64,000 nt of DNA from Macrostomum lignano (GCA_002269645.1 NIVC01003793.1:12557-76556), one strand, 5' to 3'. Shown: positions 1,251 to 64,000, counted from the first letter of the stretch. A program made the numbers and translations. The notes: generated by a model not told the origin, from the sequence alone.

Positions 1251-1291
1251 CAGGAGTCAGCGGAATGCGCCAAGGGTGCAATTAACCTCAC

Positions 1292-1615: not shown

Positions 1616-1842
1616 TCTAATTTCTCTCAAGTTAAACAAGCTGCTGTAGCGATATGAATTTTCTTGTCTTTTCTTTTGGCTGAAGGAATTTCCGAACGCA
1701 CTGCTCCATATTATCTGGAAAATGGCTGAATTTGAGCGCATTTGGATGCTTATTGGTTAGTTGCTAATTGGCAAATCAGAGAGGCGATGAGATCTGCCTG
1801 CAACTTGAAGCTTCTGTGGGAAAAGCGCTAAGGATAAGCACC

Positions 1843-2230: not shown

Positions 2231-2249
2231 GGGTAAATGCCGAGGAGAC

Positions 2250-2448
2250 AGTAGAGTCGCCAAGGAGGCAGGGTTGTCGCCAAGGAGATAGGGTTGTCGC
2301 CAAGGAGACAGGATTTTTGCCAAGGAGACAATGTTGTCGCCAAGGAGACAAGGTTGTCGCCAAGGAGACAATGTTGTCGTCAAGGAGACAGGGTTGTCGC
2401 CAAGGAGACAGGGTTGTCGCCAAGGAGATAGGGTTGTCGCCAAGGAGG
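2250..2448. repeat. 20-bp minisatellite (GGGTTGTCGCCAAGGAGACA)n
   Basis: About ten 20-nt units adjacent to the 13-bp array. Confidence 0.9.
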
Positions 2449-3063
2449 ACGATGCATATTCCAGTCAATACATATCTGAGTGCCACAATGAAATCTGCGT
2501 GTTTTAGCAAAGCTTAAACTGACCCCACTCTTCCAATTGATGTCTTTTTAACAAAAAGGGGCTCATTCAACAGTCCAATTACGCTGAATCGAATGGGACT
2601 CAAAAATTGCTCAAAAAGATCAATGGAAGGCTTCCTTTTATTCTTCGTAAGTTAAAGCAATTTACAAGAAGGCGAAGGAAAAAAAGGAGGGCTGAGAGAG
2701 CCACTTCAGTGAAAAAATCCCTGCACGAACTTGACCTTTTTTTATGTCCGATGAAGGAGAAAGAGCCGCTGGTGCAGGTGTGGAATCCAGGATTTCGAGG
2801 TCAGTCGAGTTTGAGGGCTCTCCAGTCAGCCGGTCCCTGCAGTCTTGAGCAACTTTGAGTCTTGAGCTCGAATGTCTCATTACTTCCATCGTAACCGAGG
2901 CCGCGATTCCATTAATTGATTTTTGCGGCTCCTTTTTTCTTCATCTCTTCAGCTTTCAATTTTTCCCAATTATTGAGCCCCAACAGCCTCTGCAGCGTCT
3001 GCATGAGATTTTGCGCTTTCTTCTGGCTCGCCTGGTGAAATCTTATTCGAACTCTCTCACTGA

Positions 3064-31600: not shown

Positions 31601-32910
31601 CGTGTTCCGGCCCAGTTCTAAAGGCACCGATCGGCTGACGCTGACCTGGAAGATTGAAGACGGCATTATTCAACACGTTGAAGTGCAAGAACGAAATAAG
31701 CAGAACGATTTCTCTTTGGGCAAGACGCTCCTTATTGAGGTTGGTGCTTCATTTAAAATGAACTGTGACTGTTGGGTCACTGTTGAGTCACTAGCGCATC
31801 ATGAGTTGCAGAATCGTAAAATAGTCTCGGAAAGAGTTGTCCAGATTGACGCAGATTCGCTTTAGACGCAACTCAGTGATTCTAAGAGTCTAGAGTCACT
31901 TCTTTTCTATTTTACCTGTGCTACCTGCCACGACTCTGAAACTACTATGGGACGCTTCTTGGCTTCTACCTCTTTACCTACCCCTTTACCTACCTCTCTA
32001 CCTACCCCTTTACCTACATCTCTACCTACCCCTTTACCTACCTCTCTACCTATCCCTTTACCTACATCTCTACCTACCCCTTTACCTACCTCTCTACCTA
32101 CCCCTTTACCTACCTCTTTACCTATCCCTTTACCTACATCTCTACCTACCCCTTTACCTACCTCTCTACCTATCCCTTTACCTACCTCTCTACCTACCCC
32201 TTTACCTACCTCTCTACCTACCCCTTTACCTACCTCTCTACCTACCCCTTTACCTACCTCTTTACCTATCCCTTTACCTACATCTCTACCTACCCCTTTA
32301 CCTACCTCTCTACCTATCCCTTTACCTACATCTCTACCTACCCCTTTACCTACCTCTCTACCTACCCCTTTACCTACCTCTCTACCTACCCCTTTACCTA
32401 CCTCTTTACCTATCCCTTTACCTACCCATTTATCTACCCCTTTACCTTCCTATTTACCCACCCCTTTACCTACTACAGGGCGAAGAATTCGAAGATCTAG
32501 ACGAAATAATCGCCCGCTATGTGCAGCCAATGGCGGCCTACATTCGCGACATCAGCATGCACAAGTATTACGTCAGGCCGGCGCCTGGCGCCTCCGGCGT
32601 CGCAGCTATCGACGACAGTTTGCGCCAAGCTAAACAGGCCAGGCCAACTACCATTCCCTACAGTCTGTCGGCTGTGACCAATATGCCTGGCAAATTTCTA
32701 TTGGCCTACCTGCCTAGGAGTAATGTACACCGCGAGTACATCACTGTGCGGCCTGGCGGGCTGCGCTATAGGGGCAGGCAGTTTGCCAGCTTGAATCAGT
32801 TGTTAGCCTGGTTTAAGCAGCACTATAGAGAGCCGCCGCCTAGCGCTGCTAATGCGCCCGGTTCGGCCCTGATGACCCCGGCTGGCTCTGTGATTTCGGC
32901 TAGAATGTGA
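16694..32910 (+). CDS. SUPT6H: Transcription elongation factor / histone chaperone SPT6, 12 coding exons, 1696 aa as modelled
   Basis: Exons 16694-17573, 19310-19893, 21775-22128, 22996-23192, 23675-23885, 24720-25137, 27238-27524, 27697-28047, 28805-29317, 29766-30362, 31473-31739 and 32479-32910. All introns are GT-AG with matching phases, and the total of 5091 nt is divisible by 3. Hallmarks: acidic N-terminus, [54 protein letters not shown]1 region (WVCPFC...LDNGLSGFI) and tandem SH2 (KRVIDHPNF...[16 protein letters not shown]). AATAAA follows at ~32928. Confidence 0.96.
17590..19200. repeat. (GACA)-rich complex minisatellite in SPT6 intron 1
   Basis: Mixed cactgagacagacaga / cactgggacagaca / ccgatacagaca units filling intron 17574-19309. 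Confidence 0.95.
20013..21670. repeat. 33-bp minisatellite in SPT6 intron 2 (~50 nearly identical units)
   Basis: Unit gagcgattccctatgacccattcttatctatct. It is the source of the 594-aa [11 protein letters not shown] pseudo-ORF. Confidence 0.97.
22186..22926. repeat. 21-bp minisatellite in SPT6 intron 3
   Basis: Unit aggatctgaatctcatagct(t/c). Confidence 0.95.
23245..23560. repeat. 25-bp minisatellite in SPT6 intron 4
   Basis: Unit aataatcgctctgtacatacattta. Confidence 0.92.
23905..24700. repeat. 32-bp minisatellite in SPT6 intron 5
   Basis: Unit gtgttctgagttggtgtctaacgcattctata. Confidence 0.93.
25195..27000. repeat. 21-bp minisatellite in SPT6 intron 6
   Basis: Unit ttctttcttagaatttgagtg with interspersed ccaaaag variants. 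Confidence 0.96.
28077..28640. repeat. 28-bp minisatellite in SPT6 intron 8
   Basis: Unit cagttgctgggccagcctcccag(ctccc/atcct/agtgt). Confidence 0.94.
29348..29690. repeat. 21-bp minisatellite in SPT6 intron 9
   Basis: Unit gggtcatctggttcagggttt and variants. Confidence 0.93.
30465..31270. repeat. ~22-23-bp minisatellite in SPT6 intron 10
   Basis: Unit cattagattcctttaaaatacc(c). Confidence 0.92.
31965..32475. repeat. 12-bp minisatellite in SPT6 intron 11
   Basis: Alternating tttacctacccc / tctacctacctc units running up to the 3' splice site (tactacag, 32478). Confidence 0.94.
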
Positions 32911-33194
32911 CACCTGTTTAATTCATTAATAAACTCAACTAAATTGTACTTTGTTTAGCGTTCATCAATCTGAGGATTTATTTGTTGCTGCCTGTGTGTG
33001 TTTTTTAATTTGTTTTTATAGTCGTAGTTTGGTTGTACTTTTGTTGCCCTTTTTTATACAGAAGCTTTGGGAGCATTGAATCAAACAATTCACCTTTATT
33101 GTTTGTAACAAGGTTCCGACCTTGAAATCATCTAGGGTCCTTGGGTCATTCAAGGTCAAGTAAAGTGGGAGATTTAGTGTATGATTTGAGAGTG

Positions 33195-36453: not shown

Positions 36454-39400
36454 ATGCGTTCAAGCATTAGAAACATACTATCGTTAAATACGACAAAATT
36501 ATCTATTCGGCGTTGCTTAGCAACAACTGACGCCTCAGCCGCGTCGTCTAGTTCGAGTTGTTCAACGTCTTCGCCAAGTGCTGTCGCTGCTGGAAGCTTC
36601 CGTTTCGCTGATCTGTCAATCGAGCGAACCGAACAGCCCAAGCCGAAGCCGCCCAATGACAGTCTGGTGTTTGGCAGCCAGTTCTCCGATCACATGCTGT
36701 TGGCCAGGCATTCCAAGTCTGCCGCTGGTTGGATGGCGCCTCGCATTCAACCCTTGCAGAGTCTGCCGTTGCATCCGGCGTCCAAGTGCTTGCACTACGC
36801 TTTGGAGTGCTTCGAAGGATTGAAGGTTATAAATTTGTGGCTGGGATGCTCAGTTTGATTGTATCAACTTGTAATGGGATTTTGATGTTGTAGGGATGAG
36901 ATTCTGATGCTGTAGGGGTGAGATTTTGATGCTGTAGAGGTGAGATTCTGATGCTGTAGGGGTGAGATTTTGATGCTGTATGGGTGAGTTTTGATGCTGT
37001 AGGGGTGAGACTTTGATGCTGTATGGGTGAGACTTTGATTCTGTATGGGTAAGATTTTGATGCTGTATGGGTGAGATTCTGATGCTGTAGGAGTGAGATT
37101 TTGATGCTATAGAAGTGAGATTCTAATGATGTAAGGGTGAGATTTTGACACTGTAGGGATTAGATTCTGATACTGTAGGGGTGAGCTTTTAATGTTTTAG
37201 GGGTGAGATTTTAATGCTGTATGGGTGCAATTCTGATGCTGTAGGGATGAGATTCTGATGCTGTAGGGATGAGATTTTTGATGCGGTAGGTGAGATTCGA
37301 TGCTTTAGGGGTGAGATTCGATGCTGTAGGGGTGAGATTCGATGCTGTTGGGGTGAGATTCGATGCTGTAGGGGTGAGATTTAGATACTGTAGGGATGAG
37401 ATTCGGATGATGTAAGAGTGGTTTTAATGCTCTAGGAGAAGATTTTGAGACACTGTATGGGATAAGATTTTGGTGATGGGCGAAGTTCCAACCCCAACCC
37501 CACAGGCTTTCCGTGGCGTTGACGGCCGGGTCCGCCTGTTCCGCCCCATGGAGAACTGCAAGCGGATGCTGCGCAGCGCCGAACGCTCAACCCTGGCCTC
37601 GTTCGACCCCGCCGAGCTGCACCGATGTCTGCGCGAGCTGATTCGGCTGGACGCCGACTGGGTGCCGGATTCGCGCGACTGCTCGCTGTACATCCGGCCT
37701 ACCATGATCGCCGCCGAGCCGCGCATCTCCGTCGGGCCCGCCGAGGAGACCCTGCTGTGAGCCGCTCGTGTGTCCTGCTGCCCGCACGAACTCATTTATG
37801 AACTCACTCATGAACTCATTTATGAACTCATTCATGAACTTATTTATGAACTCACTCATGAACTCATTTATGAACTCATTCATGAACTCATTTATGAACT
37901 CACTCATGAACTCATTTATGAACTCACTCATGAACTCATTTATGAACTCATTCATGAACTTATTTATGAACTCACTCATGAACTCATTTATGAATTCATT
38001 CATGAACTCATTTATGAACTCACTCATGAACTCATTTATGAACTCACTCATGAACTCATTCATGAACTCATTCATGAACTTATTTATGAACTCACTCATG
38101 AACTCATTCATGAACTCATTCATGAACTCATTTATGAACTCACTCATGAACTCATTTATGAACTCATTCATGAACTCATTTATGAACTCACTCATGAACT
38201 CATTTATGAACTCACTCATGAACTCATTTATGAACTCACTCATGAACTCATTAATGAACTCACTCATGAACTCATTCATGAACTCATTCATGAACTTATT
38301 TATGAACTCACTCATGAACTCATTTATGAACTCACTCATGAACTCATTCATGAACTCATTCATGAACTTATTTATGAACTCATTCATGAACTTATTTATG
38401 AACTCTCTCATGAACTCATTTATGAACTCATTCATGAACTCATTCATTAACTCATTTATAAATTCACTCATGAACTCACTTATGAACTCATTTGTGAACT
38501 CACTCATAAACTCACGTATAAACTCAACTCATGAACTCACTCGACTGATTGCTTAATCACCCACGCAACCGTCACGGTTTCCTCCTGCGCTTTATTACTC
38601 AGTTTCTTTCGCAGAATCTTTCGCTAACCATTGGTTATAGTTCAACTCCTAAGATGATAAATTCTATTACTATTATGTTACCTCCCGCCACGAAAAATTC
38701 ACTTACAGGTACGTGATCACGGGGCCGGTGGGGCCCTATTATCCAACCGGGTTCAAGCCCGTAACGCTGCTAGCCGATCCAACTTATTGCCGAGCTTGGC
38801 CGGGTAAATTTTATGACTAACTGATTCTAATGCTTTTATACTACTTGTTGATTGCAGCTAGGAATATGAATAAAGTGTCTTATCTTTTAGCGTGTTGTAA
38901 TATGCGTTTTAGTTGGTTTTGCAGCTGCCTGTTAACAGTAGGTGGTACACTTGAATGTTAGAACTCACTGGCTGTTTAATACGGGTTTTATTGTGTTACA
39001 GAACTTACAGCACAGTATGTTTAATGTTGGGTCTCACAGGTGTTATGTGTTATAGCTGGTGTTACACATGTCATTATTTACATGAGTTCATGTTACAGGT
39101 GTTGTTATTGGTGTTACAGGTGTTCTGAATAGTGTTACATGTGTTATAAACGGTGTTACAGGTGTTATGAATAGTGTTACATGTGTTACAAATGGTGTTA
39201 AAGGTGTTATGTTGGTGTTATGATTAGTGTTACAGGTGTTTGAGCATTAGGATAAACCTCTCCCTAACCTGCCCCTATTCTCCTCACCCAACCACCAGGC
39301 GGCGTTGGCAACAACAAAATGGGCGCGAACTACGGACCTACCTGCTACGTACAGTTGCAGGCCGCCGCCCAGGGCTGCCAACAGGTGCTGTGGCTATACG

Positions 39401-39822
39401 GGCCCGAGCACCGGCTAACAGAGGTTGGCACCATGAATTTGTTCATATTCTGGCGCAGCAAAGACACTGGCAAGCCTCAGCTGGTGACGCCGCCGTTAAA
39501 CAGCGGATTAATCCTACCCGGCATTGTTCGGGACAGCCTATTGCGTCTAGCTCGCGAATGGAACGAATGGGAAGTATTAGAACGGGACATCACTATGGGC
39601 GAACTAATTGAAGCTATCGATAGCGGCCGGCTAATGGAAATGTTCGGCTCTGGCACCGCTTGCATTGTTAGCCCGGTTAGCGGAATTAAATACGACGGCA
39701 AAGTGATCCAGGTGCCCACTATGAGCCAGGGCGCCCCGGTTACTATGCGCTTCTTTAAGACGCTGACGGATATTCAGTACGGCCGGATCAAGGATCACCC
39801 CTGGGCCGAGATTGTCGCCTGA
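36454..39822 (+). CDS. BCAT: Branched-chain amino acid aminotransferase, mitochondrial-type, 4 coding exons, 413 aa
   Basis: Exons 36454-36825, 37506-37756, 38709-38803 and 39299-39822 (1242 nt, GT-AG, phases match). Motifs [50 protein letters not shown] (PLP Lys), [27 protein letters not shown] and EMFGSGTAC. The Arg/Ser-rich N-terminus resembles a transit peptide. Confidence 0.96.
36880..37415. repeat. ~22-bp degenerate minisatellite in BCAT intron 1
   Basis: Unit gtgagattttgatgctgtaggg. Confidence 0.9.
37787..38545. repeat. 12-bp minisatellite in BCAT intron 2
   Basis: Units tgaactcattta / tgaactcactca / tgaactcattca. Confidence 0.95.
39040..39240. repeat. Degenerate GTGTTA-rich repeat in BCAT intron 3
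   Basis: Recurrent ggtgttaca/gtgttat motifs. Confidence 0.7.
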
Positions 39823-50289: not shown

Positions 50290-50665
50290 TTTCTCATCTA
50301 GTGCAATAATAGTTGTCTAATCTAGTGCAATAATAGTTGTCTAATCTAGTGCAATAATAGTTTTCTTATATTGTTCAATAATTGTTTTTACATCTAGTGC
50401 ATTAATAATTTTGTCATCCAGTGCAATAATTGTTTTAAATCAAATGATTAAAATCTTTATTTATAACTTTTAATTAAAAAAGTTTATACTACAAAGATTC
50501 GAACCCAGGCCCCATATATGCACTCCAATCTGTTCACATCTAGGCTAGCTCTCATTGAATAAATAAAATGAATTGTAGCACTTATATAATTCAACACACA
50601 CAAAGCAGTTTATGAAATAATCAGTTTCTTAGCCAATCAGTATCAGTCTCAGTTAAAGTTAACAA

Positions 50666-51350
50666 TAGTGTTCCGCCATAAGGAGGGTCCATGTACCGTA
50701 GCCGTAGCCATAAGCAAAACTATGGCTTACTCCAATTCTCCATATTCTGTAGCCGTAAGGACCCCAAAATTACCATATTCCCATAGTTCCCGTAGCCATA
50801 GCCATAGTTTTAACAAAAAGTTTAAAAATCAAAATATTTTGAATCAAGAAGATAACCTAATGCTTAAACAATTGCAAATTAAATTAGAAAATAAAAGAAA
50901 CACTTAATTGTCTTTGTAAGATTATATTTCATCTTTTTTTAGAGCAACAATACAGTTGCTTTTATACAAGTACTAGTACTGATTTAGTATAAAATACAAG
51001 TACTTTTGTTATTGAAAGTACAAATGCTAAAGTTTTTCACATTAATAAAAATTAGAGTTTGCTAGTGTTTTATTGTACTTTTTTAGGTATATTTTATAAG
51101 TTTCTGGGTTGATAATACAATTTACTTAAAGTTCTTTGTTTTACTCTACCTGTTTCTAATATTTTTTTAATTTTTAACATTAATAACTACAGCTATGGGA
51201 ATCTATGGAATGTGACAGCAACTACCATATTAGAACTAGCCATAAGAGCAGCTAGCTACTGTAGGCATATCCAAAGCTGCCGTAGGCACCTATTTTACCG
51301 TATTTGTCGTAGGATCCCGTAGCTGTAGCTATGGCTACGGCGGAACACTA
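50666..51350 (-). mobile_element. 685-bp hAT-like non-autonomous element (TAGTGTTCCGCCAT family), best-preserved copy
   Basis: 15-bp TIR tagtgttccgccata / tacggcggaacacta (1 mismatch). Perfect TSD gttaacaa at 50658-50665 and 51351-51358. Confidence 0.92.
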
Positions 51351-54300
51351 GTTAACAATATGGTTATGCAATATAAATCAAGTCTTGTAGAATGCTTCCA
51401 CACTGTGTTTTCAATATTGTGACATAATTCAATTGTGTGTCAGAATTCAGCCAGTTTATTGAGTAAATAACTAAAAAGCCTGGTGTGATGCAATCTATTT
51501 CAGAATCAGAATTCAACCAGTCACTTTTCTCTAGCATTTTTGCAATGCATTTTAAGTCAAAAAAGCTGCTTGGCCTTTGAATAAAGCATTTTTTCTAATT
51601 TTTAATCCCTTTAGCATTAAGCAATTTCTTAGCCACAATGCATGCATTATCATGGAAAAATTTCTGATTGAACAGTGCAAGTTTAAAGAAAATTGGTTGA
51701 GCTATTTTTCTCTAATCAATCTCTACTCAATCTACCTAGATAGATAGATACTAACAGACCATTTTTAGTATATGGAATAAACAAATATAGCCAATTAACT
51801 TCTTAGTGTTTCCTCTGCTTTTAGACATGTTTTTGCAATATCAGTAACATAACTCTTATGTTTAACATTGCTAGTTTGCTGATTTGTTTTGCAAAAAAGT
51901 TTTGTCTTTGCAGTGTTTTAAATGACCCTTGCAATCATTTAAGTACTAGGATTATATCTTCCTGATTCAAAGCACTTTATTTCCAAAAAAATTGTCAAAA
52001 CTATGGCTGTGGCTATGTGAATATGGTAATATTGGAGTCCCTATGGCTACAGAATATGGAGAATTACATTAAGCCGTAGTTTTGCTTAATGGCTATGGTT
52101 ATTGCAAATGAACCCCCCTTATGGCAGAACACTAAAGTGTTCTATAACACTTTTCTTTATTTAATAAAAGCACTAGGCCTTATGCCTATTCATTTGTTGG
52201 AGAGTTGGAGTTGAGTTAGAAAGCTTTTGAGCATAGCAGCTGTCTATCTTGTGTTTCAATTATATACACTGCCACACCCTGGCCATATTGTGGATTTTGT
52301 TACATTTGCCCAATAGTATTTGGCTATGTAGTAAAAAGTGTATGCTAGTAAATTATATCAATTAAGTGTTCTAGTAAATTGCATGATTAACAAGCACATA
52401 ACCAATGCAACAAGTAGTAGACAGATGCAACAAATAATTGCTGCAGAAAAACAAAACACATAATTTTAGAAAAGACTATTACTAAAGCAAAATTAGTTAT
52501 ATATATTATTGATTTAGGCAACTTTTTAATTAGTTGTAGAACTATAGAAAACTATGCTATATTATTTAATAAACATTTATTGTCATAATTTAGAAGTTAA
52601 ATTAATTACAGTAAATGATTGTTTAGTATAATTACACCAAGCTTGAACATTTATAGAGTTGAGAATTGTAAGCCCATGATTGTGCAAAACAATTGTATTT
52701 CTTCCTTGTATGCCATATGTACACTAGCTAAAGCATTTGCATGCCAGAATTTTCTGGCATATACTATACCTTTCACAATATAGCATTGCAGATCATGTAG
52801 TATATGCCCAAAAGTTCAGGCTTGCATTGGCCTTGTAAGCCAAAAGTTAGGCATGCACAGTTACCATGCATTAGGCCTAAGCAAATAGTGTGCATAGACA
52901 CCTGGCATGCGTTTTATAGACTCACAGAAAGTTAGTGTTAAGTGGAAAATAGTTTAAAAAGTAAATTTTAAGTCTAAATTTCAAGCTTTCCAGTTTTTAA
53001 GCTTGTAATAAGGTATTTAAAACTTAAACAAATGTTTGTGCATTTCAATTTTCTGCTATAAATTAGATAAGCAAGAAAGAAAAATAATCAACCAAATTAT
53101 CAACCAAAAAGGTTCCTTTGTAGAACACAAAAATGCCAGAATTTTCCAATGTGCACTTTATAGAAATCAGATGCCAAAAATAATTGAATACACACTTAAA
53201 TTTATGAAAAATCATAAAAAGATAAGTATAAATGTCAATGAAATAAAAAGAACCATTTTATCCCAGAATTAATTTCAATGAAATTAGAGACTTTAAAAAA
53301 TAATGTCAGCTGAACTAAATGAATAATACTTGAGTTATTGAAAATTAAATTAATTAAAAATCATTTATCCACCCAAAAAGCAAACTGGGATACCAAATGC
53401 ACCAAAAAGCATAGATACTATACTATAGTAGCATTGGCATTCCAAATTTTATCATGCCATATTTGTAGTAAAAATTTGTTATGTTTTAGATAATAAAATC
53501 TCTTTATTCTAAGTTTTCTTATAGCCATATAATAAATTAACAAAATTAACAAAAACATCTTATTTCTAAAAGTGAAAAGCAAAATGTAAAGACAAAGTGC
53601 CCTATTAGAAATTTTGAATATGTGCAAATGTGTGGCAAGGGTCTAGCAATAATATGCCAAGAGGTCATTTTCTAAGGTACATGGCCATGTCAAAGGATCA
53701 TTTAAAAAGTTGCTTACAAAAGGTCACAAGTAGCATAGTCTTAACTCCTAGAAATGCTTTTTTACTTACAAAATTTTTTATTCCCATTAATTTGATATTT
53801 CATTTGATATTTTGCTTTTAATTGTTGTTTCTATAATTCATAGAATAAATTTGTTATAATATATTTTACCATGTGGCAATTTTGTTATATTGCTATTTTG
53901 ACATGTCATTTTTCTATGCAGGGCTGTTTTGATATATATTTCAAGCATTGCATTGTGTTACACTGCACTATGTTGCACTAAAGGCTGCTTCACAGAAAAT
54001 GTGCCATGCCACAGGGTCATTTTGAAAACATGCCAGATAGCCATCTGCCATTTAGCAACTTTTTCCAATAAGACCAAAGTGAAAGCAGTCAATCAAAAAG
54101 CAAAAACTCTTTCAAACCTAGTGATTTGTTTACTTTGATACAATAAATATAGATGCACTATATATATGATAGATGATAATGTATCTGTTTATTTAGCCAA
54201 GAAAATAAACCACCATTAGACAAGATCTCTGTAGCTGTAATCTATAACCAAATACAGCTAAAACTGATAAAAGAATGATAGGATAAAAGCAAATTTTACT

Positions 54301-56737
54301 TTTGTTGCATAGTAATAGTGCTGTGGGTCAGACTTGGTGTTGCAAGCCAGATCTGGTCCATGTGCCAGAGTTTTCCAACCCCTGGTCTAAAGCATGTGCT
54401 AGCAAACTCTGGCCTTTGCCTCTTTCTCTCTATCCCTTTGAAACTTCTCTCTTCTTTCTTTCTCCTTTCTTTTCTTATCTTATCTATCATCTCATTTTCT
54501 TTGTCATTTATTCTTTCCTCTTTCTTTCCTCATCTCCTTTCTCCCTTCTCTCTTTTGGTGTCTCTTTCCCTCTTCTCTTTCTCCTTTCTCCTCTCTCCCT
54601 CTCTTTACTTAGGAGTCTATAGCAAACAAATTTTTACATACCCAGGCATACAGAGTTTCCATTTTTAAAGTTGAGATCTATAGCCTCTTAGAATCTATTT
54701 TGACTACTTATATAGTCACCATATCAGTAACAGCTGCCTATTTAAGAGTCAACCTTAGGCTTAGAGGGCATAAGAAAACTGCAGTAATATTTTTCTCAAG
54801 TTTTTTATTATAGTCAATGTCTAACTTTTTCCTCTGATAGTAAATATAGTTTCTATATATTAAATGTTTTTTATTGGGAAACAAAGCTAACCTGTTAAAA
54901 AGTAAAAAAGAAACAATTTTATCATTTGAGTGTATTTACTTAAATATATAGGTTAAGACTTCAAAAAATGTTTATTGTCAAAATTTGTATAAATGTCAAA
55001 ATTTATTTTATAGTACTTATAAAGCATCTAATGTACATATATTGCCTATGTCTATGACTAGTAAGCAAAGACTTAATTTTTAGAACATTCAACTTAGTCT
55101 ATTTCCTGCTTTTGGATCTAGATTTCATTCTTATTATTGTAAAGCAATGTAATACAATAACACAAACTAAAAATAAAGATTGAACATAAGAAATATAAAT
55201 GAGCAAAAAATTTATTCATATAGGTTATCTTTAAGACTAGAAATGTATGCCAATGTACACGACAGTCAAAATAAACCATTATTATTTAGAAAACAGCCCT
55301 ATAAGGTAATTAAAACAAAACCTTAAGCATATACTAGTATAATTTATTTGAAAATATTTTTTAAAAAATTTCTATAATAAAGTACTAGTTTAGTATGTTT
55401 TATGTAGCTGGCACACCTAAGATTTTAAAATAATAGGATATATCTAAAAAATTGCTGTCAAAGAAAGTAGTTTTTTATGATCTTTTGCTTTATATAAATA
55501 GTAAAAAAGTACCTATACCATTAATAATCAAAAATAAAACTACAAGATATCACAAAATCACAATATAGTTCTATTCTACATATTTGTTCAGACATATTAG
55601 TAGCAATATGCCATATATGTGTAGTGTCTAGATGTGTTTTAATTGTGCCTACTTATATGCAAAAATATTTTTATGGTGTACAAATAATATAAAAAACAAT
55701 AAAAGCTATATAAATTAACTGTTGCATTATAATGGTAAAGCAGTTGTCATTTATTTGTATAGTTTTTGTTTTATGTAACATTTGAGCAATATAAAAAAAT
55801 ATTTGGTTAACTATATAGACTTTAGTGAGTCATTTGAAAAAATATTTCTTAGAGAGCTAGATGCTTCATATCTTTATCAATTCTCTATAAAGCTACAAGT
55901 ATTATTTAGAATAAATAAAGTTTTGAGCATAAAAATCAAACACAAGTAGTAAAATGGTCATTGGTCATCAAAGGCATTGCATTTAGGCTAATAGAAGACA
56001 AAAAATGAGATTATAAAAAGTAAACTTTTTTGTGAAGTAATTTTAAATTTTTCTATATTAAAATGATAAAACAATTTTTTCTAAGGGTGTCCCATGTAGA
56101 AAAGGAAAATTTTTTTGTTATAGTTATTAGTATTGCTATTTTAAAACAAATAAGATACTCGTAACTTGATTTTCTGTAGTTAAGATAACATAGTAGAAAA
56201 TAATTTATCTTAGAATTAATTGAACCCAACCATTTTAATGTTAATTTCTAAATAAAGTAATTTTAGCATATCTATTGAGCCATTCATAAATGTATTTTCA
56301 AACATTTAATAGAAAAGATTAATCTTCTTAAAGATAAGATTCTTTTTTCTGTCAGTTAGATTATTAAAACTATATTCTGACAGATATTTTAACTTATAGG
56401 TCTTTCTTAACTGTTAGTATTGCCCTTTTTATTGTCATAATGTCGTTTTGAATATAAAATTTGGAACTTTACAAAAATTAAAATACTCTAGTTGGAAGCA
56501 GCTAATAAATGAATAATGTAGTGTCTGCTTTGTTATGTTTTATTTATGCTACCAGTTGACACGTGGATATTTGAAATTGTAATGTTTAGTTTAGTTTATA
56601 AGTGAAGGCTGATTAAAATATAAAAAATGAATGCTACTGGTTTTAAATGCACAGAAAAACGCATCTAAATACATGTGTTGTTTGCCATATTTCCTTAAAC
56701 ATTTTATTATTTTGTATGTGCTACTTTTAGTAGTTGA

Positions 56738-56989
<252 letters not shown>

Positions 56990-58449
56990 TCCCGGCTTGA
57001 TCTAATGCTCATTGCTTGTTGCTTTTTTCCTATGTATCTTTTGCGTCTGAATAAATACTATATTACTGCCATTGTGACGACAACTGTAATACGAGTACCC
57101 AACTGAAATTGGCAGGTTTATTGGTGTCAATACTGCCAATTATTAACATTTTAATATTACCATTAATATTGCATTCTAACTCAAATTCGTTTTTGTTTGA
57201 CTTTTGCGTAAACTTCTTGTCAATGTTAAGCATTGCTTTTATTTTAATTTTGAAAAGAAAAATAAACTTTGTTTTAACTGAGCAAAAAGGAGAAAAAAAA
57301 TCAAACGTTTTCGACTTCGAATTGGGACACTAGGATTGTCTGCCTAGCTTAGAGAACAGCAAAAAAATACTAAATCTATAATACATCAACTTTAATAGCT
57401 ATGAAGACAAAAAATTATATTTACTAAGGTTTAGCTTATTTATTTATCAACATCCGGTTTAGTGGTTGGTTATTAAATTGGAAATTAATTATTGGTGTGC
57501 TTTAGTCGTTGTTTTTTTAAATAATTTTTTTTAATAATGCTTTCCTTGGTTAAGTGGCCAAACTATCAATTAGCTTCCCAACCGAACATTTGACCGAATT
57601 TCTAAACTAGGCCAGCCTAACTGCCCTCGCTCTGTCCTGCCTGTGTCGTCGGGGTTTGACCCTGTCGTCGCTGCCGCAGGGTCAGTGCAGTACTGGCTAC
57701 GTCAGTGTGACTGCCTCGCTTCTGGCCAAGCCATGTAAGTCGAATCATTAATTTAATATTTTGTTCAAAAGCACTTACAATTTCTTCTTTCGCACGCCTT
57801 GGTCGTAAAATTCCGTGTTAAAACTACATGCCATCATTACACGGTATTGGGTAGCTTACAGTTTCAATGCGGCCTACAAGGTAACGGCACTGGAAGATAT
57901 TTTAGTCGTGTACTTACATGTATACTTGTGCTGTATAAGTAGTATGATACGCTGCGGCTTCTCGGGTACACTCTTTCATCATTCGGCAGTCTAATCGAAT
58001 GTACAAATAAGTGAAATCCATCTTGTCCGTCTCCTATTGTCGGCGTTCGCACATTCACTAGGCCGCGTACAAGTACAACTCGTACAACTCTTTAACCATC
58101 GACGACTTGGACACCTTGGATCGACTCGGGCTGTCTGCAAAGCAGATTTCAACAAATTGTAGGTTTGCGGTCATCCTTGTCTGTCACATACCGAGTTGCC
58201 TTTGTCTGTCCCTCTAGCGTTTATGTCGTGCAGAATTTAAACTTCGGATGTCGTGTTACCCGTGCATGTACGAAATCGCCTCTGGAAGCCGCGTTACATG
58301 TACATGTACGGAAAATCGCCCTTGGTTCTACTGTGAATGTACATATGTATGTCGGGATACACGTACGAAATCGCCCTTAGTTGGATGTCGTGTTACACAC
58401 TTGCACACGTGCCTGTACATCTTGACTGCTCGTAACTATAATTAAGTAC

Positions 58450-58665
58450 ATGTACGCCTTCAACCCATCGACCTATAAAACAGCAAAGAGCACAAAGAAA
58501 AAGTCGTCTGCAACAAGGACATCACCGGAGACCGACGAAACACAATCAGCTGCAGCCAACAATGACACCGCAAAACATGCAAATCAACCCGCGTCGCCTA
58601 CTGCGTCAACAAGCGGCATAAAATCTGCTACTGATAAGCCAGCTGCCAGAGAGAGGAGGCACTGA
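58450..58665 (+). CDS. Possible divergent member of the small Lys/Ala-rich protein family (start uncertain)
   Basis: Coding-like composition. The segment gccaacaatgacaccgca (ANNDTA) resembles gccaacaaggacgccgcc (ANKDAA) of type B. Confidence 0.35.
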   Translation: MYAFNPSTYKTAKSTKKKSSATRTSPETDETQSAAANNDTAKHANQPASPTASTSGIKSATDKPAARERRH

Positions 58666-59566
58666 TTCGAAAGCAACTGATGTCAATCAAGTTAAACTAT
58701 TCTTAATAATTGGCATTCAAAAGTAACCATACCCTACTACACTACTACTACCCATACTACACGAGTCTGTATTATGTTCCATCCGCTCATTTATGCAGTA
58801 CATACATGTATTCTATAATTAGCTAAAGCCAACTTTACAATTACGTTAGCATAAGAAATTTCAGTTAGTCTGCTCATATGCATATCATCTCTCTGTATTA
58901 TTGCATTAAAAATTGCAATAAATTTTGAATAGATTAGACTTAAAGTGAGCATATCTGCAAGTTCCCTTATTTAACTACACCTGTGCGGTACATACAGCCT
59001 AGCCACACTTCTTAACTTCCATTTAGCTTACTCCATCCTTAAGTACATGTACTTCCTTGCCTTAAGTACATTTCTAGACATCTGTAGACCAGTTGCGGCA
59101 GCCATTGTTAAAGCTGCAGCCGGAAGACTTCACTGCGTTTCAATGACACGGTTTATCAAAGCGACCCTAGTCTACAAAAAGAGAGCTATTGAAAATTATT
59201 GGTAGTTCCTTCATTCAGCAATTCAACTTTTCTACACAACTAATCTGTGGAAATGGAGTGTACGGCTCGAAAATGTATAATTTCTAGGCATCCCTTGCGA
59301 GCTGGTCGGGTCATCAGGTTTATCAATGCAACCAGCGTCGATCATTAGTTGTATGAGTAGAAAGAGTGAAATTCCTTTGGTATTTAGCTAAGTTATACTC
59401 TGGTTGGTAGCACTTAAAAATTCTAGCTAGCTACTTGATTAAGATGCACGCAGACTTCGTTCGCTGCTGTGTGTGTGTTGTTGTTGTGTGAGCACTATAT
59501 GACTTGCTTACTGTCGCCCCGATTGCAGCTCTAAGCAGCTTTCAAGCACAAAAAGCAAAACACAGA

Positions 59567-59707
59567 ATGCCAGCCAAGCAGAACCAGCAGCAGGGAGCCG
59601 GCAAGCAGCAGGCAGCCGATGCCAACAAGGACGCCAAGCAGCAAAAGCAGCAGCAACAACAACAGCAGGCTGGTGGCGCTGCCGCCAAGGCCGGTCAGAA
59701 GAAGTGA
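59567..59707 (+). CDS. Small Gln/Lys/Ala-rich protein type A, copy 1 (46 aa)
   Basis: MPAKQNQQQGAGKQQAADANKDAKQQKQQQQQQQAGGAAAKAGQKK. GC3-rich codons like SPT6/TMA7 exons, A-rich start context, upstream ttgcag acceptor-like site, and paralogous to type B. Confidence 0.7.
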   Translation: MPAKQNQQQGAGKQQAADANKDAKQQKQQQQQQQAGGAAAKAGQKK

Positions 59708-60430
59708 TGCGATTTCAGAGAGATCAATTGTTAGGTGTGCTCTGCACCGCATGACAGCCAGGCCTACTATTGGCGTGACTGAGTGGAACTCTGAGCTCTC
59801 TCTATACCTGTACAGTATACTATAATCTGTCCGCATTAGCGTATCGTCTTTGTTAGGGCTAAAGAGTCGCTGCATCCAGCTCTGAAACTGCAATTAGGTT
59901 ACTTACTGTATTCTGTACTGTACTAACCTTACTCACGTGCTGACGAAAGCTTATAGTTGTAAATTGATCCTTTGAAAAAAGTTGTTTGATTGTAGAATAA
60001 TTACAGTAGCATTTCCTAATTACATATTGGACAGTATTTTTAAAGCAAGCAGGTGTTTTCGGCTCTCGTTCTTTAAATGCTCTCTGTTTCCCTATATGCT
60101 TAGGATGTTTTGTGTTAGATCAGCAGTTGCAGACAGAGAAAGGGGGCATTACTTGCATTTGGCTTGATATAGCATCCTCTAGATTTCGTTGTCCAGCACA
60201 TCCAACTAGAGGCTAGATATGCACCAATGTTCCTTGTAGAGCTGCACTGCTCCAATAAGCGGTTAAATAAGAAGAAGTGCCCTTTAGGACATATCTAGAT
60301 AGTTTTTCTAATGAGGATGTACAGCCAGCTAGCTATACTTGAAGTTGACGTTGGTCACCTTGCAAACCGCAGCTGCTCGCTTCTCAAATTGCAGCTTCAA
60401 GCATCAGCTTCCTAATCTCAACAGACAAAC

Positions 60431-60556
60431 ATGCCTGCCAAGAAAGCCGCCGCCGACAAGAAGGCCGCCGATGCCAACAAGGACGCCGCCAAGCAGCAGC
60501 CGGAAAAAGCCGAGGGCGAGCAGGCCGCTGCCAAGGGCGGTCATAAGAAGAAGTGA
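60431..60556 (+). CDS. Small Lys/Ala-rich protein type B, copy 1 (41 aa)
   Basis: MPAKKAAADKKAADANKDAAKQQPEKAEGEQAAAKGGHKKK. It was missed by the ORF track. It shares MPAK, AADANKDA and AAAKxG..KK with type A. Confidence 0.7.
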   Translation: MPAKKAAADKKAADANKDAAKQQPEKAEGEQAAAKGGHKKK

Positions 60557-61443
60557 TCGATGTGCGTTGCGGATCGCGCTATACCAACCTGTATGCTGGC
60601 TTGATCGCGGCGCTCCTACCGACCTGTACGAGTTGCTGGATGCCTGCTGATCAAACTGCAACTTATAGCGAATTGTAATTACATGTGCTGGCCGGATACT
60701 AATCAATGTTGCATCATACTCAGTTATTACATACTACACAACTGCAGTCTCTACAGCTCTGCACTGTAAAGCGCAGACGCATTTTATACAGTACGTAAAT
60801 CGTAGCCTGTCAGCCATGCTCTATACTATGGTACCAGCTGCTCTGTTCTGACGGGCAGTCATGTACTTGTCGTAAATTACATTGTTGTACTGGGTGCATC
60901 AGTTACTTACAAAGTTGTTGCAACAACCAACAATCGTTTTTCGGCTTGAGCTCTACTTTTACCAATATTTTTGCTGCTTCCTAGTCACGTATATAGTTTC
61001 ATGCTCCTCAAGGCTTAGGGGCCTCTCGCTCACAGGCTGACAGTGGGGCTGTTTCAGTTTATGTATAAGAGTTAGACATTTTGCAGTGCAATAATTAGCT
61101 ACTGGGCTTTTGTAGACTAATCTGTGGAAATGGAGTATACGGCTCGTAAATGTATAATTTCTAGGCATCCCTTGCGAGCTGGTCAGGTCATCAGGTTTAT
61201 CAATGCAACCAGCGTCGATCATTAGTTGTATGAGTAGAAAGAGTGAAATTCCTTTGGTATTTAGCTAAGTTATACTCTGGTTGGTAGCACTTAAAAATTC
61301 TAGCTAGCTACTTGATTAAGATGCACGCAGACTTCGTTCGCTGCTGTGTGTGTGTTGTTGTTGTGTGAGCACTATATGACTTGCTTACTGTCGCCCCGAT
61401 TGCAGCTCTAAGCAGCTTTCAAGCACAAAAAGCAAAACACAGA

Positions 61444-61584
61444 ATGCCAGCCAAGCAGAACCAGCAGCAGGGAGCCGGCAAGCAGCAGGCAGCCGATGCC
61501 AACAAGGACGCCAAGCAGCAAAAGCAGCAGCAACAACAACAGCAGGCTGGTGGCGCTGCCGCCAAGGCCGGTCAGAAGAAGTGA
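61444..61584 (+). CDS. Small protein type A, copy 2
   Basis: Same translation as copy 1, offset by 1877 bp. Confidence 0.7.
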   Translation: MPAKQNQQQGAGKQQAADANKDAKQQKQQQQQQQAGGAAAKAGQKK

Positions 61585-62307
61585 TGCGATTTCAGAGAGA
61601 TCAATTGTTAGGTGTGCTCTGCACCGCATGACAGCCAGGCCTACTATTGGCGTGACTGAGTGGAACTCTGAGCTCTCTCTATACCTGTACAGTATACTAT
61701 AATCTGTCCGCATTAGCGTATCGTCTTTGTTAGGGCTAAAGAGTCGCTGCATCCAGCTCTGAAACTGCAATTAGGTTACTTACTGTATTCTGTACTGTAC
61801 TAACCTTACTCACGTGCTGACGAAAGCTTATAGTTGTAAATTGATCCTTTGAAAAAAGTTGTTTGATTGTAGAATAATTACAGTAGCATTTCCTAATTAC
61901 ATATTGGACAGTATTTTTAAAGCAAGCAGGTGTTTTCGGCTCTCGTTCTTTAAATGCTCTCTGTTTCCCTATATGCTTAGGATGTTTTGTGTTAGATCAG
62001 CAGTTGCAGACAGAGAAAGGGGGCATTACTTGCATTTGGCTTGATATAGCATCCTCTAGATTTCGTTGTCCAGCACATCCAACTAGAGGCTAGATATGCA
62101 CCAATGTTCCTTGTAGAGCTGCACTGCTCCAATAAGCGGTTAAATAAGAAGAAGTGCCCTTTAGGACATATCTAGATAGTTTTTCTAATGAGGATGTACA
62201 GCCAGCTAGCTATACTTGAAGTTGACGTTGGTCACCTTGCAAACCGCAGCTGCTCGCTTCTCAAATTGCAGCTTCAAGCATCAGCTTCCTAATCTCAACA
62301 GACAAAC

Positions 62308-62433
62308 ATGCCTGCCAAGAAAGCCGCCGCCGACAAGAAGGCCGCCGATGCCAACAAGGACGCCGCCAAGCAGCAGCCGGAAAAAGCCGAGGGCGAGCAG
62401 GCCGCTGCCAAGGGCGGTCATAAGAAGAAGTGA
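62308..62433 (+). CDS. Small protein type B, copy 2
   Basis: Same translation as copy 1, offset by 1877 bp. Confidence 0.7.
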   Translation: MPAKKAAADKKAADANKDAAKQQPEKAEGEQAAAKGGHKKK

Positions 62434-63318
62434 TCGATGTGCGTTGCGGATCGCGCTATACCAACCTGTATGCTGGCTTGATCGCGGCGCTCCTACCGAC
62501 CTGTACGAGTTGCTGGATGCCTGCTGATCAAACTGCAACTTATAGCGAATTGTAATTACATGTGCTGGCCGGATACTAATCAATGTTGCATCATACTCAG
62601 TTATTACATACTACACAACTGCAGTCTCTACAGCTCTGCACTGTAAAGCGCAGACGCATTTTATACAGTACGTAAATCGTAGCCTGTCAGCCATGCTCTA
62701 TACTATGGTACCAGCTGCTCTGTTCTGACGGGCAGTCATGTACTTGTCGTAAATTACATTGTTGTACTGGGTGCATCAGTTACTTACAAAGTTGTTGCAA
62801 CAACCAACAATCGTTTTTCGGCTTGAGCTCTACTTTTACCAATATTTTTGCTGCTTCCTAGTCACGTATATAGTTTCATGCTCCTCAAGGCTTAGGGGCC
62901 TCTCGCTCACAGGCTGACAGTGGGGCTGTTTCAGTTTATGTATAAGAGTTAGACATTTTGCAGTGCAATAATTAGCTACTGGGCTTTTGTAGACTAATCT
63001 GTGGAAATGGAGTATACGGCTCGTAAATGTATAATTTCTAGGCATCCCTTGCGAGCTGGTCAGGTCATCAGGTTTATCAATGCAACCAGCGTCGATCATT
63101 AGTTGTATGAGTAGAAAGAGTGAAATTCCTTTGGTATTTAGCTAAGTTATACTCTGGTTGGTAGCACTTAAAAATTCTAGCTAGCTACTTGATTAAGATG
63201 CACGCAGACTTCGTTCGCTGCTGTGTGTGTTGTTGTTGTGTGAGCACTATATGACTTGCTTACTGTCGCCCCGATTGCAGCTCTAAGCAGCTTTCAAGCA
63301 CAAAAAGCAAAACACAGA

Positions 63319-63459
63319 ATGCCAGCCAAGCAGAACCAGCAGCAGGGAGCCGGCAAGCAGCAGGCAGCCGATGCCAACAAGGACGCCAAGCAGCAAAAGC
63401 AGCAGCAACAACAACAGCAGGCTGGTGGCGCTGCCGCCAAGGCCGGTCAGAAGAAGTGA
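63319..63459 (+). CDS. Small protein type A, copy 3
   Basis: Same translation as copy 2, offset by 1875 bp. Confidence 0.7.
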   Translation: MPAKQNQQQGAGKQQAADANKDAKQQKQQQQQQQAGGAAAKAGQKK

Positions 63460-64000
63460 TGCGATTTCAGAGAGATCAATTGTTAGGTGTGCTCTGCACC
63501 GCATGACAGCCAGGCCTACTATTGGCGTGACTGAGTGGAACTCTGAGCTCTCTCTATACCTGTACAGTATACTATAATCTGTCCGCATTAGCGTATCGTC
63601 TTTGTTAGGGCTAAAGAGTCGCTGCATCCAGCTCTGAAACTGCAATTAGGTTACTTACTGTATTCTGTACTGTACTAACCTTACTCACGTGCTGACGAAA
63701 GCTTATAGTTGTAAATTGATCCTTTGAAAAAAGTTGTTTGATTGTAGAATAATTACAGTAGCATTTCCTAATTACATATTGGACAGTATTTTTAAAGCAA
63801 GCAGGTGTTTTCGGCTCTCGTTCTTTAAATGCTCTCTGTTTCCCTATATGCTTAGGATGTTTTGTGTTAGATCAGCAGTTGCAGACAGAGAAAGGGGGCA
63901 TTACTTGCATTTGGCTTGATATAGCATCCTCTAGATTTCGTTGTCCAGCACATCCAACTAGAGGCTAGATATGCACCAATGTTCCTTGTAGAGCTGCACT

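What the first reader, a model, noticed from the sequence alone, without database searches (positions are those of the whole stretch)
59239..64000. Recently amplified tandem array of a two-gene cassette encoding paralogous 41-46 aa charged disordered micro-proteins
Seen: each complete ~1876-bp unit carries type A (MPAKQNQQQGAGKQQAADANKDAKQQKQQQQQQQAGGAAAKAGQKK) and type B (MPAKKAAADKKAADANKDAAKQQPEKAEGEQAAAKGGHKKK). The two share MPAK / AADANKDA / AAAKxG..KK* but have unalignable flanks. Conservation confined to the reading frames suggests selection on the peptides after an old A/B duplication, followed by a very recent amplification of the pair. Both have GC3-rich codons, A-rich start contexts and an upstream TTGCAG. 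Neither has a signal peptide, Cys or aromatic residues. I do not recognise the family. Inference: these could be hydrophilin/stress-protectant-like, ribosome-associated or chromatin/sperm basic peptides needed at high dose.
Basis: partly seen in the sequence, partly recalled or inferred. Interest (0 to 1): 0.7.

Follow-up and report, generated by a model that had tools for sequence, protein, structure and literature searches.

The report
Flatworm tandem array of microprotein genes
The end of this Macrostomum lignano (flatworm) contig is a real head-to-tail array of a 1.9-kb unit carrying two related, transcribed 41-46-codon genes for tiny lysine/alanine/glutamine-rich peptides with no known relatives; the layout looks built for mass production from one long spliced transcript, but what the peptides do is unknown.

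Summary
The window is M. lignano contig NIVC01003793.1, and its last 4.76 kb (59239-64000, ending at the contig end) holds 2.5 copies of an 1877-bp unit. Each unit carries ORF A (46 aa) and ORF B (41 aa).

- **Other copies:** two further contigs of the same assembly end in the same array, with at least 11.5 and 5.7 units.
- **Paralogy:** A and B are true paralogues. Their similarity exceeds composition, 0 of 2000 codon shuffles reach the observed score, and it stops at the stop codon.
- **Splicing:** each ORF sits 37-39 nt downstream of TTGCAG, the species' spliced-leader acceptor motif. RNA-seq-derived gene models splice an upstream leader exon (57611-57735) and a donor in B's 3' region onto the A acceptor.
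- **Age:** units show no substitutions within an array but 30 fixed differences between arrays that share one junction. This indicates concerted evolution, not only recent amplification.
- **Relatives:** no homologue, Pfam, PDB or Rfam match was found.

Best reading: a homogenised, probably polycistronic, trans-spliced array making abundant small basic helix-prone peptides. Translation and function, possibly hydrophilin-like, remain untested.

The parts
57611..57735 (+). Leader exon (non-coding, G+C-rich island in A+T-rich DNA). It is followed by the donor T|GTAAGT at 57736 and is cis-spliced to the A acceptor in NCBI model Mlig001540g3.
   Evidence: tblastn of the P0003 N-terminus gives 100% at 57611-57733. 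The sequence reads ...gccaagccat|gtaagt, and the codon split T+CT gives Ser exactly as in P0003.
59239..64000 (+). Tandem array, 2.54 units of 1877 bp, cut by the contig end.
59239..61115 (+). Unit 1, the edge unit. It carries 3 private or ancestral differences in its first 70 nt.
61116..62992 (+). Unit 2
62993..64000 (+). Unit 3, partial
59523..59528 (+). TTGCAG acceptor of gene A; the exon starts at 59529. Copies lie at 61400-61405 and 63275-63280.
   Evidence: The motif [T/C]TNCAG is from PMC8629364. Gene models splice onto it or start 0-8 nt after it.
59567..59707 (+). Gene A CDS: 46 aa, 4.8 kDa, pI 10.2. Copies lie at 61444-61584 and 63319-63459.
60254..60271 (+). Two AATAAG hexamers, a possible poly(A) signal of gene A about 125 nt upstream of the B acceptor (inferred).
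60389..60394 (+). TTGCAG acceptor of gene B; the exon starts at 60395. A copy lies at 62266-62271.
60431..60556 (+). Gene B CDS: 41 aa, 4.2 kDa, pI 9.8, closed upstream by an in-frame TAA at 60413. A copy lies at 62308-62433.
60791..60796 (+). Donor A|GTACGT in the 3' region of B, cis-spliced to the next A acceptor in NCBI model Mlig030344g1 (intron 60791-61405). A copy lies at 62668-62673.
   Evidence: The P0002 sequence and its position, L003 10001-10879 = window 60706-61584.
61090..61095 (+). AATAAT, a possible poly(A) signal of gene B just before the unit junction (inferred).

Best explanation
This is a tandemly amplified, continually homogenised array of a two-gene cassette specific, as far as can be seen, to Macrostomum lignano.

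**Proposed mechanism**
1. Transcription starts at or just upstream of a leader exon about 1.8 kb before the first cassette and runs through many units as one precursor.
2. Each cistron (A, then B, then A again) is preceded by a TTGCAG acceptor. That acceptor receives the 35-nt spliced leader. In minor products it is instead cis-spliced to the leader-exon donor or to a donor in the preceding B 3' region.
3. Polyadenylation between cistrons releases many identical mRNAs of about 0.7-0.8 kb.
4. Each mRNA is translated from its first in-frame AUG into a 4-5 kDa basic peptide rich in Lys, Ala and Gln, fully hydrophilic and helix-prone. The AUG carried by the leader opens only a 2- or 7-codon upstream ORF.
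5. The array raises dose, and unequal exchange or gene conversion keeps the units identical.

**What is shown and what is inferred**
- Shown: the array, the paralogy, the acceptor and donor sites, their use in RNA-seq-derived models, and the homogenisation pattern.
- Inferred: a single promoter, SL addition at both acceptors, translation, and the peptides' role.

My low-confidence (about 0.25) guess for the role is an abundant cytosolic or nuclear hydrophilin/'Hero'-like protectant or nucleic-acid-associated polycation in this intertidal worm.
For: **Array is real and recurrent**
- It appears in three contigs, all ending inside it or cut by the 10-kb fetch limit: the window with 2.5 units, L002 with at least 11.5 and L001 with at least 5.7.

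**Concerted evolution**
- There are 0 substitutions among 13 W/L002 units and 0 among 4 L001 units.
- There are 30 fixed substitutions plus 15-24 indel columns between the two arrays, which share the same unit junction.
- The edge unit keeps G at 59260, as L001 does.

**Transcription and splicing**
- The Mlig_3_7 annotation is built only from RNA-seq and cuts genes at SL and poly(A) sites (PMC5730564).
- Its models include a 58-aa 5'-partial CDS starting 2 nt after TTGCAG.
- They include a 56-aa model starting 8 nt after it.
- They include leader exon -> A acceptor (P0003).
- They include B 3' donor GTACGT -> next A acceptor (P0002).
- The acceptor matches the published SL acceptor motif, and A-to-B spacing fits the published operon criterion of under 1 kb (PMC8629364).

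**Coding**
- A/B similarity runs from the acceptor to the stop codon and ends there.
- All A/B indels inside the CDS are multiples of 3: 12, 6 and 3 nt.
- The L001 B variant differs by an in-frame 3-nt deletion plus N15S, while A is identical.
- Codon bias is stronger than in SPT6/BCAT exons of the same window: AAG 17/19 vs 18/32, p = 0.015; GCC 20/24 vs 29/64, p = 0.0016; GCG 0/24.
- Position -3 is A in both start contexts.

**Peptide properties**
- GRAVY is -1.8 and -1.5, and Gly is 10.9% and 7.3%.
- AlphaFold2 predicts helices 8-42 (A) and 4-22 plus 24-37 (B), with pLDDT 76 and 71.
Against: - I saw no SL-containing read, no expression value and no peptide evidence. Transcription is known only through the deposited gene models.
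- The deposited annotation never calls the 41- or 46-aa ORFs as such. A appears only inside longer 5'-extended ORFs, and B only in a frameshifted copy.
- No canonical AATAAA or ATTAAA lies in the unit.
- Purifying selection is not shown: 1 substitution in 267 ORF nt against 4.3 expected, p = 0.07. Equally long substitution-free stretches occur in the UTRs.
- The 21-nt block identical between A and B, synonymous sites included, could reflect gene conversion or an RNA-level constraint.
- No homologue was found anywhere.
- The helices are not amphipathic. This removes one common mode of action of LEA-type protectants.
- Identity between units may be inflated by consensus polishing of a PacBio assembly.
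Confidence: 0.55

Rival explanations
1. The unit is an expressed repeat or long non-coding RNA locus. The A and B ORFs are incidental, G+C- and CAG/GCC-rich segments kept similar by gene conversion, and they are not translated into functional peptides.
For: - ORFs of 40 or more codons are common by chance in this unit, with dozens listed.
- Composition-adjusted BLASTP of A vs B gives E 0.055.
- The ORFs show no significant deficit of substitutions.
- A 21-nt block is identical at synonymous sites.
- No homologues were found in 1.84 billion representatives.
- The annotation pipeline did not call the micro-ORFs themselves.
Against: - Similarity begins near the acceptor and ends exactly at the shared stop codon.
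- All CDS indels are multiples of three, including the allelic or paralogous 3-nt deletion.
- Codon-specific bias (GCC 20, GCG 0; AAG 17, AAA 2) goes beyond plain G+C richness.
- B's AUG is the first in-frame start after an in-frame stop, and both starts have A at -3.
- There is no Rfam match or other RNA feature.
Confidence: 0.22
2. The genes are real, but each unit, or each gene, has its own promoter. The cis-spliced models joining the leader exon or the B 3' region to A are rare read-through by-products, so the array is an ordinary tandem gene cluster and not an operon-like polycistron.
For: - Intergenic distances of about 690 and 850 nt from stop codon to the next acceptor exceed the roughly 100-bp mode of M. 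lignano operons.
- Multi-mapping of identical units makes the long models (10001-32742 in L002) unreliable as to which copy is joined.
- Only two models were placed in an 11-unit array.
Against: - Both gene types carry the SL acceptor motif with no upstream cis donor inside their own outron.
- A donor in B's 3' region is spliced to the next A acceptor, which requires transcription across the B-to-A spacer.
- A leader exon 1.8 kb upstream is spliced to A.
- Pairs of SL genes under 1 kb apart are classed as operons in this species.
Confidence: 0.25
3. The peptides act as basic nucleic-acid binders, either chromatin or sperm nuclear proteins or ribosome-associated factors, and not as protectants.
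For: - Net charge is +6 and +5, and pI is 10.2 and 9.8.
- Lys/Ala-rich N-termini resemble histone and ribosomal-protein tails (my own recollection, not tested).
- High gene dose is typical of histone and ribosome components (established knowledge).
Against: - Only 17-27% of residues are basic, there is no Arg, and there are several acidic residues. This is far below protamines and protamine-like proteins.
- No match to any histone, ribosomal, TMA7 or SERF family appears in Pfam at E up to 10 or in PDB sequences.
Confidence: 0.2
4. The array is an assembly artefact, a single cassette over-expanded by the assembler.
For: All three contigs break in the array, and unit-to-unit identity is suspiciously perfect.
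Against: - Three independent contigs carry it, one as a distinct sequence variant with 30 fixed differences and the same junction.
- Unit-length variants (1877/1875/1870) occur at specific positions inside arrays.
- A 1.9-kb period is well within PacBio read length (established knowledge).
Confidence: 0.03

Closest known systems
Alternating alpha/beta-tubulin tandem arrays of trypanosomes (polycistronic, resolved by SL trans-splicing); from established knowledge
   Same: Two paralogous genes alternate in a head-to-tail array. The units are near-identical. The likely route is one long precursor cut into monocistronic mRNAs by spliced-leader addition and polyadenylation, with gene dose set by copy number.
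   Different: This is a metazoan (flatworm). The products are 41-46-aa orphan peptides, not conserved structural proteins. Cis-splicing onto the same acceptors also occurs. Polycistrony is inferred here, not demonstrated.
SL trans-spliced operons of Macrostomum lignano and C. elegans (PMC8629364, PMC5730564)
   Same: The genes share one orientation, gaps are under 1 kb, each cistron is preceded by a [T/C]TNCAG acceptor, and precursor-like transcripts exist in the annotation.
   Different: Known operons hold 2-9 mostly unrelated, conserved genes about 100 bp apart. Here identical copies of one orphan gene pair repeat at least 11 times with spacers of 0.7-0.85 kb.
Hydrophilins, small LEA-like and 'Hero' heat-resistant proteins (definition of Garay-Arroyo et al. 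2000; from established knowledge)
   Same: Gly is above 6% and mean hydropathy is below -1. There are no Cys or aromatic residues and no signal peptide. The peptides are highly charged and predicted helical or disordered.
   Different: They are much shorter than known members. There is no LEA, KGG, CsbD or Hsp12 Pfam match and no amphipathic periodicity. Stress induction is unknown.
Tandemly amplified small Ala-rich helical protein genes, such as flounder type I antifreeze arrays, and concertedly evolving histone or rDNA arrays (established knowledge)
   Same: Small helix-prone Ala-rich products are encoded in many near-identical tandem units. Identity within an array is far higher than between arrays.
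   Different: Ala is only 24-32%, there is no Thr periodicity and no signal or pro-peptide. The habitat gives no reason for antifreeze.

Membership tests
SL trans-spliced operon (M. lignano criteria of PMC8629364) | Adjacent genes on the same strand, less than 1 kb apart | tested here: met
   A stop 59707 to B acceptor 60389 is about 680 nt. B stop 60556 to the next A acceptor 61400 is about 845 nt. All lie on the + strand.
SL trans-spliced operon (M. lignano criteria of PMC8629364) | [T/C]TNCAG acceptor at the 5' end of each downstream gene | tested here: met
   TTGCAG lies 38 nt (A) and 36 nt (B) upstream of the AUG.
SL trans-spliced operon (M. lignano criteria of PMC8629364) | RNA-seq reads carrying the 35-nt spliced leader at that acceptor | not testable with these tools
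   Support is indirect only. Annotated 5'-partial CDSs start 2 and 8 nt after the AG, and the pipeline cuts genes at SL peaks.
SL trans-spliced operon (M. lignano criteria of PMC8629364) | One promoter and one precursor for all cistrons | tested here: inconclusive
   Models join the leader exon to A and the B 3' region to the next A. No precursor spanning several units was seen.
Hydrophilins | Gly content above 6% and hydrophilicity index above 1 | tested here: met
   A: Gly 10.9%, GRAVY -1.81. B: Gly 7.3%, GRAVY -1.47.
Hydrophilins | Accumulation under water deficit or osmotic stress | not testable with these tools
   No expression data were reachable. The gene IDs are absent from the paper library and from four supplements.
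LEA, KGG, CsbD and Hsp12 stress-protein families; TMA7 and SERF small basic proteins | Match to the family profile | tested here: not met
   Pfam-A gives 0 families at E up to 10 for both peptides. PDB sequence profile search gives 0 hits.
Class A amphipathic helix (LEA group 3-like mode of action) | Hydrophobic moment at 100 degrees above that of shuffled sequence | tested here: not met
   muH is 0.03-0.23, and 36-97% of shuffles reach the observed value.
Protamines and sperm nuclear basic proteins | Very high Arg/Lys content (roughly half of residues or more) | tested here: not met
   Lys is 8/46 and 11/41, Arg is 0, and Asp+Glu is 2 and 6.
Concertedly evolving tandem gene array | Units more alike within an array than between arrays that share the same unit structure | tested here: met
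   0 substitutions within arrays, 30 between them, with the same junction. Caveat: assembly polishing may contribute.

The most novel reading that the evidence does not exclude
A flatworm-specific 'microprotein factory': dozens of identical A/B cistrons are transcribed as one precursor and released by spliced-leader trans-splicing. They yield very abundant 4-5 kDa basic single-helix peptides that form a previously unseen class of cellular protectant or ribosome/chromatin cofactor. The class has stayed invisible to annotation and protein databases because the products are shorter than the usual ORF cut-offs.
Probability: 0.12. Interest if true: 0.7.

Novelty: new variant of a known kind. Interest (0 to 1): 0.4.

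Why it matters
If the peptides are made, they would be an unannotated, lineage-restricted and probably very abundant microprotein pair in a transgenic regeneration model. In that model, RNAi, in situ hybridisation and reporter lines can test function quickly.

The locus would also be a metazoan example of the trypanosome-style strategy of repeating the same cistrons inside a trans-spliced polycistron to raise dose. It would be a clean case of concerted evolution between homeologous arrays in a neopolyploid genome.

It also shows a blind spot. The deposited annotation and the protein databases searched here hold only artefactually extended or frameshifted versions of these ORFs.

Tried and rejected
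- **Spliced-leader RNA or 5S array:** the SL sequence is absent from the window. There is no Rfam hit at gathering score over the whole window, nor at E up to 1 on 57400-61500. No tRNAs were found.
- **Homologues:**
  - Two word-indexed searches and a full HMMER profile search of 1.84 billion representatives returned only three M. lignano models of this same locus family.
  - A JGI metagenome scan found nothing.
  - Exact look-ups of A and B found no called gene.
  - Caveat: the 56- and 58-aa models seen on the contigs were not returned, so these databases seem to lack very short proteins. Absence of homologues is therefore weak evidence.
- **Known domains:** Pfam at E up to 10 and PDB sequences gave nothing for A and B. 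Pfam on the seven other ORFs of the unit, including antisense and alternative frames, gave only a sub-threshold SH3_2 hit at E 0.033. That hit is rejected.
- **Amphipathic-helix idea:** rejected.
- **Expression or function from the literature:** gene IDs Mlig030344, Mlig029044 and Mlig001540 are in no searchable paper. They are also absent from the supplements of four M. lignano transcriptome papers. A fifth paper had no supplement held.
- **General literature search:** one search on small disordered proteins in M. lignano was uninformative. The subgenome paper does not mention tandem repeats.
- **Frameshifted B copy (P0001) as evidence of decay:** rejected as weak. It is a single-G loss in a GGG run within 700 bp of a PacBio contig end, and the other five B copies of that contig are intact.

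Full report
**1. Where we are**

The window is eukaryotic. It carries SPT6 exons (YqgF, HHH, S1 and SH2 domains, 27.7-32.9 kb) and a class IV aminotransferase exon at 39.3 kb. It has many intronic minisatellites.

- A search with peptide B returned one protein, from Macrostomum lignano.
- Fetching the contigs that encode the hits showed that window 50706-64000 is 100% identical to the last 13,295 bases of contig NIVC01003793.1 (76,556 bp) of assembly GCA_002269645.1, Mlig_3_7.
- Window position 64000 is therefore the contig end, and the array is truncated by the assembly.

**2. The observation**

It is correct in every particular.

- Units begin at 59239, 61116 and 62993.
- The 2.5 units differ by three substitutions, all in the first 70 nt of the edge unit, and by one 2-bp change in a (TG)n run.
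- Comparing the A half of the unit with the B half gives one significant match, 59607-59713 vs 60459-60561. It lies inside the two ORFs.
- The nucleotide alignment shows weaker similarity from the acceptor AG through the 5' UTR, and none after the stop codon.
- The peptides are compositionally biased, so composition-adjusted BLASTP gives only E 0.055.
- Shuffling tests show the similarity is real. No codon shuffle out of 2000 reaches the nucleotide score, and the protein score has z = 6.7.

**3. The array elsewhere**

Two more contigs of the same assembly hold it.

- L002 is the end of the 1.24-Mb contig NIVC01000056.1. It has 12 A and 11 B copies, identical to those of the window, running to the contig end.
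- L001 (NIVC01004846.1, 33.5 kb) has 5 A and 6 B copies in the 10.7 kb fetched, at about 97.5% identity.
- Aligning 17 A-to-A units shows 0 substitutions among the 13 window/L002 units and 0 among the 4 L001 units. There are 30 fixed substitutions and 15-24 indel columns between the two groups.
- Both groups have the same junction between the end of one unit and the start of the next.

The unit structure therefore predates the 1.6% divergence. The identity within each array reflects homogenisation by unequal exchange or gene conversion, or renewed amplification. It does not reflect a single very recent burst.

The window's edge unit keeps G at 59260, the state found in L001, while all internal units have A. 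This is what concerted evolution predicts for array edges. One caveat applies: consensus polishing of a long-read assembly can erase differences between units.

**4. Transcription and processing**

The Mlig_3_7 annotation is derived purely from RNA-seq. Its TBONE step cuts transcriptional units at mapped spliced-leader and poly(A) sites. ORFs are then called by TransDecoder (PMC5730564). Its models at this locus are informative.

- A 58-aa 5'-partial CDS in L001 begins 2 nt after the AG of TTGCAG.
- A 56-aa one in the window's own contig begins 8 nt after it.
- P0002 (Mlig030344g1, window 60706-61584) joins an ORF in the 3' region of B to the next A. The donor is A|GTACGT at 60791 and the acceptor is TTGCAG|CT at 61400-61405. 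The split codon A+CT gives the Thr seen in the protein.
- P0003 (Mlig001540g3) joins an exon at window 57611-57735 (donor T|GTAAGT) to the A acceptor.

The spacer between B and the next A is therefore transcribed. So is the 1.8 kb between an upstream leader exon and the first A.

TTGCAG is an instance of [T/C]TNCAG, the top motif at M. lignano SL acceptor sites. Same-strand SL genes under 1 kb apart are classed as operons in that study (PMC8629364).

The SL ends in AUG. Joined to these exons it opens only ML* (A) or MLQASAS* (B), so the main AUGs remain the first in-frame starts (by reading the sequence). B is also closed upstream by an in-frame TAA.

No AATAAA is present. AATAAG (60254, 60266) and AATAAT (61090) are the only near-consensus hexamers. 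I did not see SL reads themselves, so trans-splicing and the single promoter are inferences.

**5. Coding or not**

*For coding*
- The A/B similarity ends at the stop codon.
- The CDS indels between A and B are 12, 6 and 3 nt.
- The L001 form of B differs by N15S and an in-frame 3-nt deletion, while A is unchanged.
- Codon use is more extreme than in the conserved exons of the window, and it is codon-specific, not merely G+C-rich: GCC 20, GCT 3, GCA 1, GCG 0; AAG 17, AAA 2; Fisher p = 0.0016 and 0.015.

*Against, or neutral*
- One substitution in 267 ORF nt against 4.3 expected is not significant, p = 0.07.
- UTR stretches of similar length are equally unchanged.
- The 21-nt identical block could be a conversion tract.
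- One B copy in L001 is frameshifted (P0001). It has lost one G of a GGG run close to a contig end and is most simply a sequencing error.

**6. The peptides**

- A is 4.8 kDa with pI 10.2. It has 16 Gln, 11 Ala, 8 Lys and 5 Gly.
- B is 4.2 kDa with pI 9.8. It has 13 Ala, 11 Lys and 6 Asp+Glu.
- GRAVY is -1.8 and -1.5, which meets the two numerical hydrophilin criteria.
- Single-sequence AlphaFold2 predicts one helix in A (8-42, pLDDT 76) and two in B (4-22 and 24-37, broken at Pro24, pLDDT 71). 'Helix-prone' is a fairer description than 'disordered'.
- The helices are not amphipathic.
- Pfam at E up to 10 and PDB sequences give nothing. A profile search of 1.84 billion representative proteins returns only the three M. 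lignano models. A metagenome scan is empty.
- The short models known to exist were not returned, so the databases evidently omit such small products. 'Orphan' is therefore provisional.

**7. Interpretation**

The well-supported part is this: a concertedly evolving tandem array of two paralogous, transcribed micro-ORF genes, each behind an SL-type acceptor, downstream of a leader exon.

The most economical mechanism is a long precursor resolved by trans-splicing and polyadenylation into many identical small mRNAs. This is the logic of trypanosome tubulin arrays, placed in a flatworm whose genome is known to use SL operons.

The role of the peptides is open. I rank a hydrophilin/Hero-like protectant or a general polycationic cofactor first, at about 0.25. 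A ribosome or chromatin binder comes next. Protamine-like and antifreeze-like readings are disfavoured by composition.

**8. Literature**

No paper in the library mentions the three gene IDs. Four supplements of M. lignano expression studies lack them. I found no prior description.

Noticed in passing
window 54000-59238 vs L002 6230-11628: The window's contig and the 1.24-Mb contig NIVC01000056.1 are only 92-93% identical further upstream in blastn pieces. In 400-nt windows of a direct alignment, identity climbs from 94.7% to 96.5%, 98.6%, 99.7% and then 100% on approaching the array. This looks like a gene-conversion gradient between homeologous or allelic loci centred on the array, or an assembly or polishing artefact.
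   Followed up: partly
window 16694-33000 (+): An SPT6 transcription-elongation-factor gene: an acidic N-terminal exon, then YqgF, HHH, S1 and SH2 exons. Its introns are filled with long minisatellites (about 17.3-19.3 kb, 19.9-21.7 kb, 28.0-28.7 kb, 31.9-32.6 kb), which create huge spurious ORFs on both strands.
   Followed up: partly
window 39319-39822 (+): An exon of a class IV (branched-chain) aminotransferase, PF01063, E 3e-17. Further minisatellites lie at 34.9-35.8 kb and 37.6-38.6 kb.
   Followed up: no
window 59607-59627 and 60471-60491: The 21-nt block GCCGATGCCAACAAGGACGCC is identical in A and B. It contains an out-of-frame ATG that opens alternative ORFs starting MPTRTP (68 aa at 59619-59825, and inside the 103-aa ORF at 60339-60650). 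Their similarity ends where the main-frame stop lies, so they look like by-products.
   Followed up: partly
L001 442-657: The only database 'homologue' of B (P0001, 71 aa) is a B copy with one G missing from a GGG run, so it reads on into the alternative frame. It lies within 700 bp of the contig end, and the other five B copies on that contig are intact.
   Followed up: yes
window 59460-59490, 61337-61367, 63214-63242: A (TG)n/(TTG)n microsatellite about 40 nt upstream of each A acceptor is the only length-variable site between units: 2 bp within arrays and 3 bp between arrays.
   Followed up: no
window 58450-58665 (+): A 71-aa hydrophilic ORF (MYAFNPSTYKTAKSTKKKSSATRTS...) lies inside the intron between the leader exon and the first A. 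It has no Pfam match and no obvious acceptor motif.
   Followed up: partly
L002 17552-27111: An annotated 153-aa gene model starts 12 codons before one A start codon and ends at the stop of an A copy five units downstream. It was not retrieved by the protein searches, so its exon structure is unexplained and may be a multi-mapping artefact.
   Followed up: no
window 1067-2510 (-) and 50290-50436: An ORF with a membrane-protein-like N-terminal part runs into a degenerate repeat and has no Pfam match. A separate 24-nt tandem repeat of 6 copies lies at 50290-50436.
   Followed up: no
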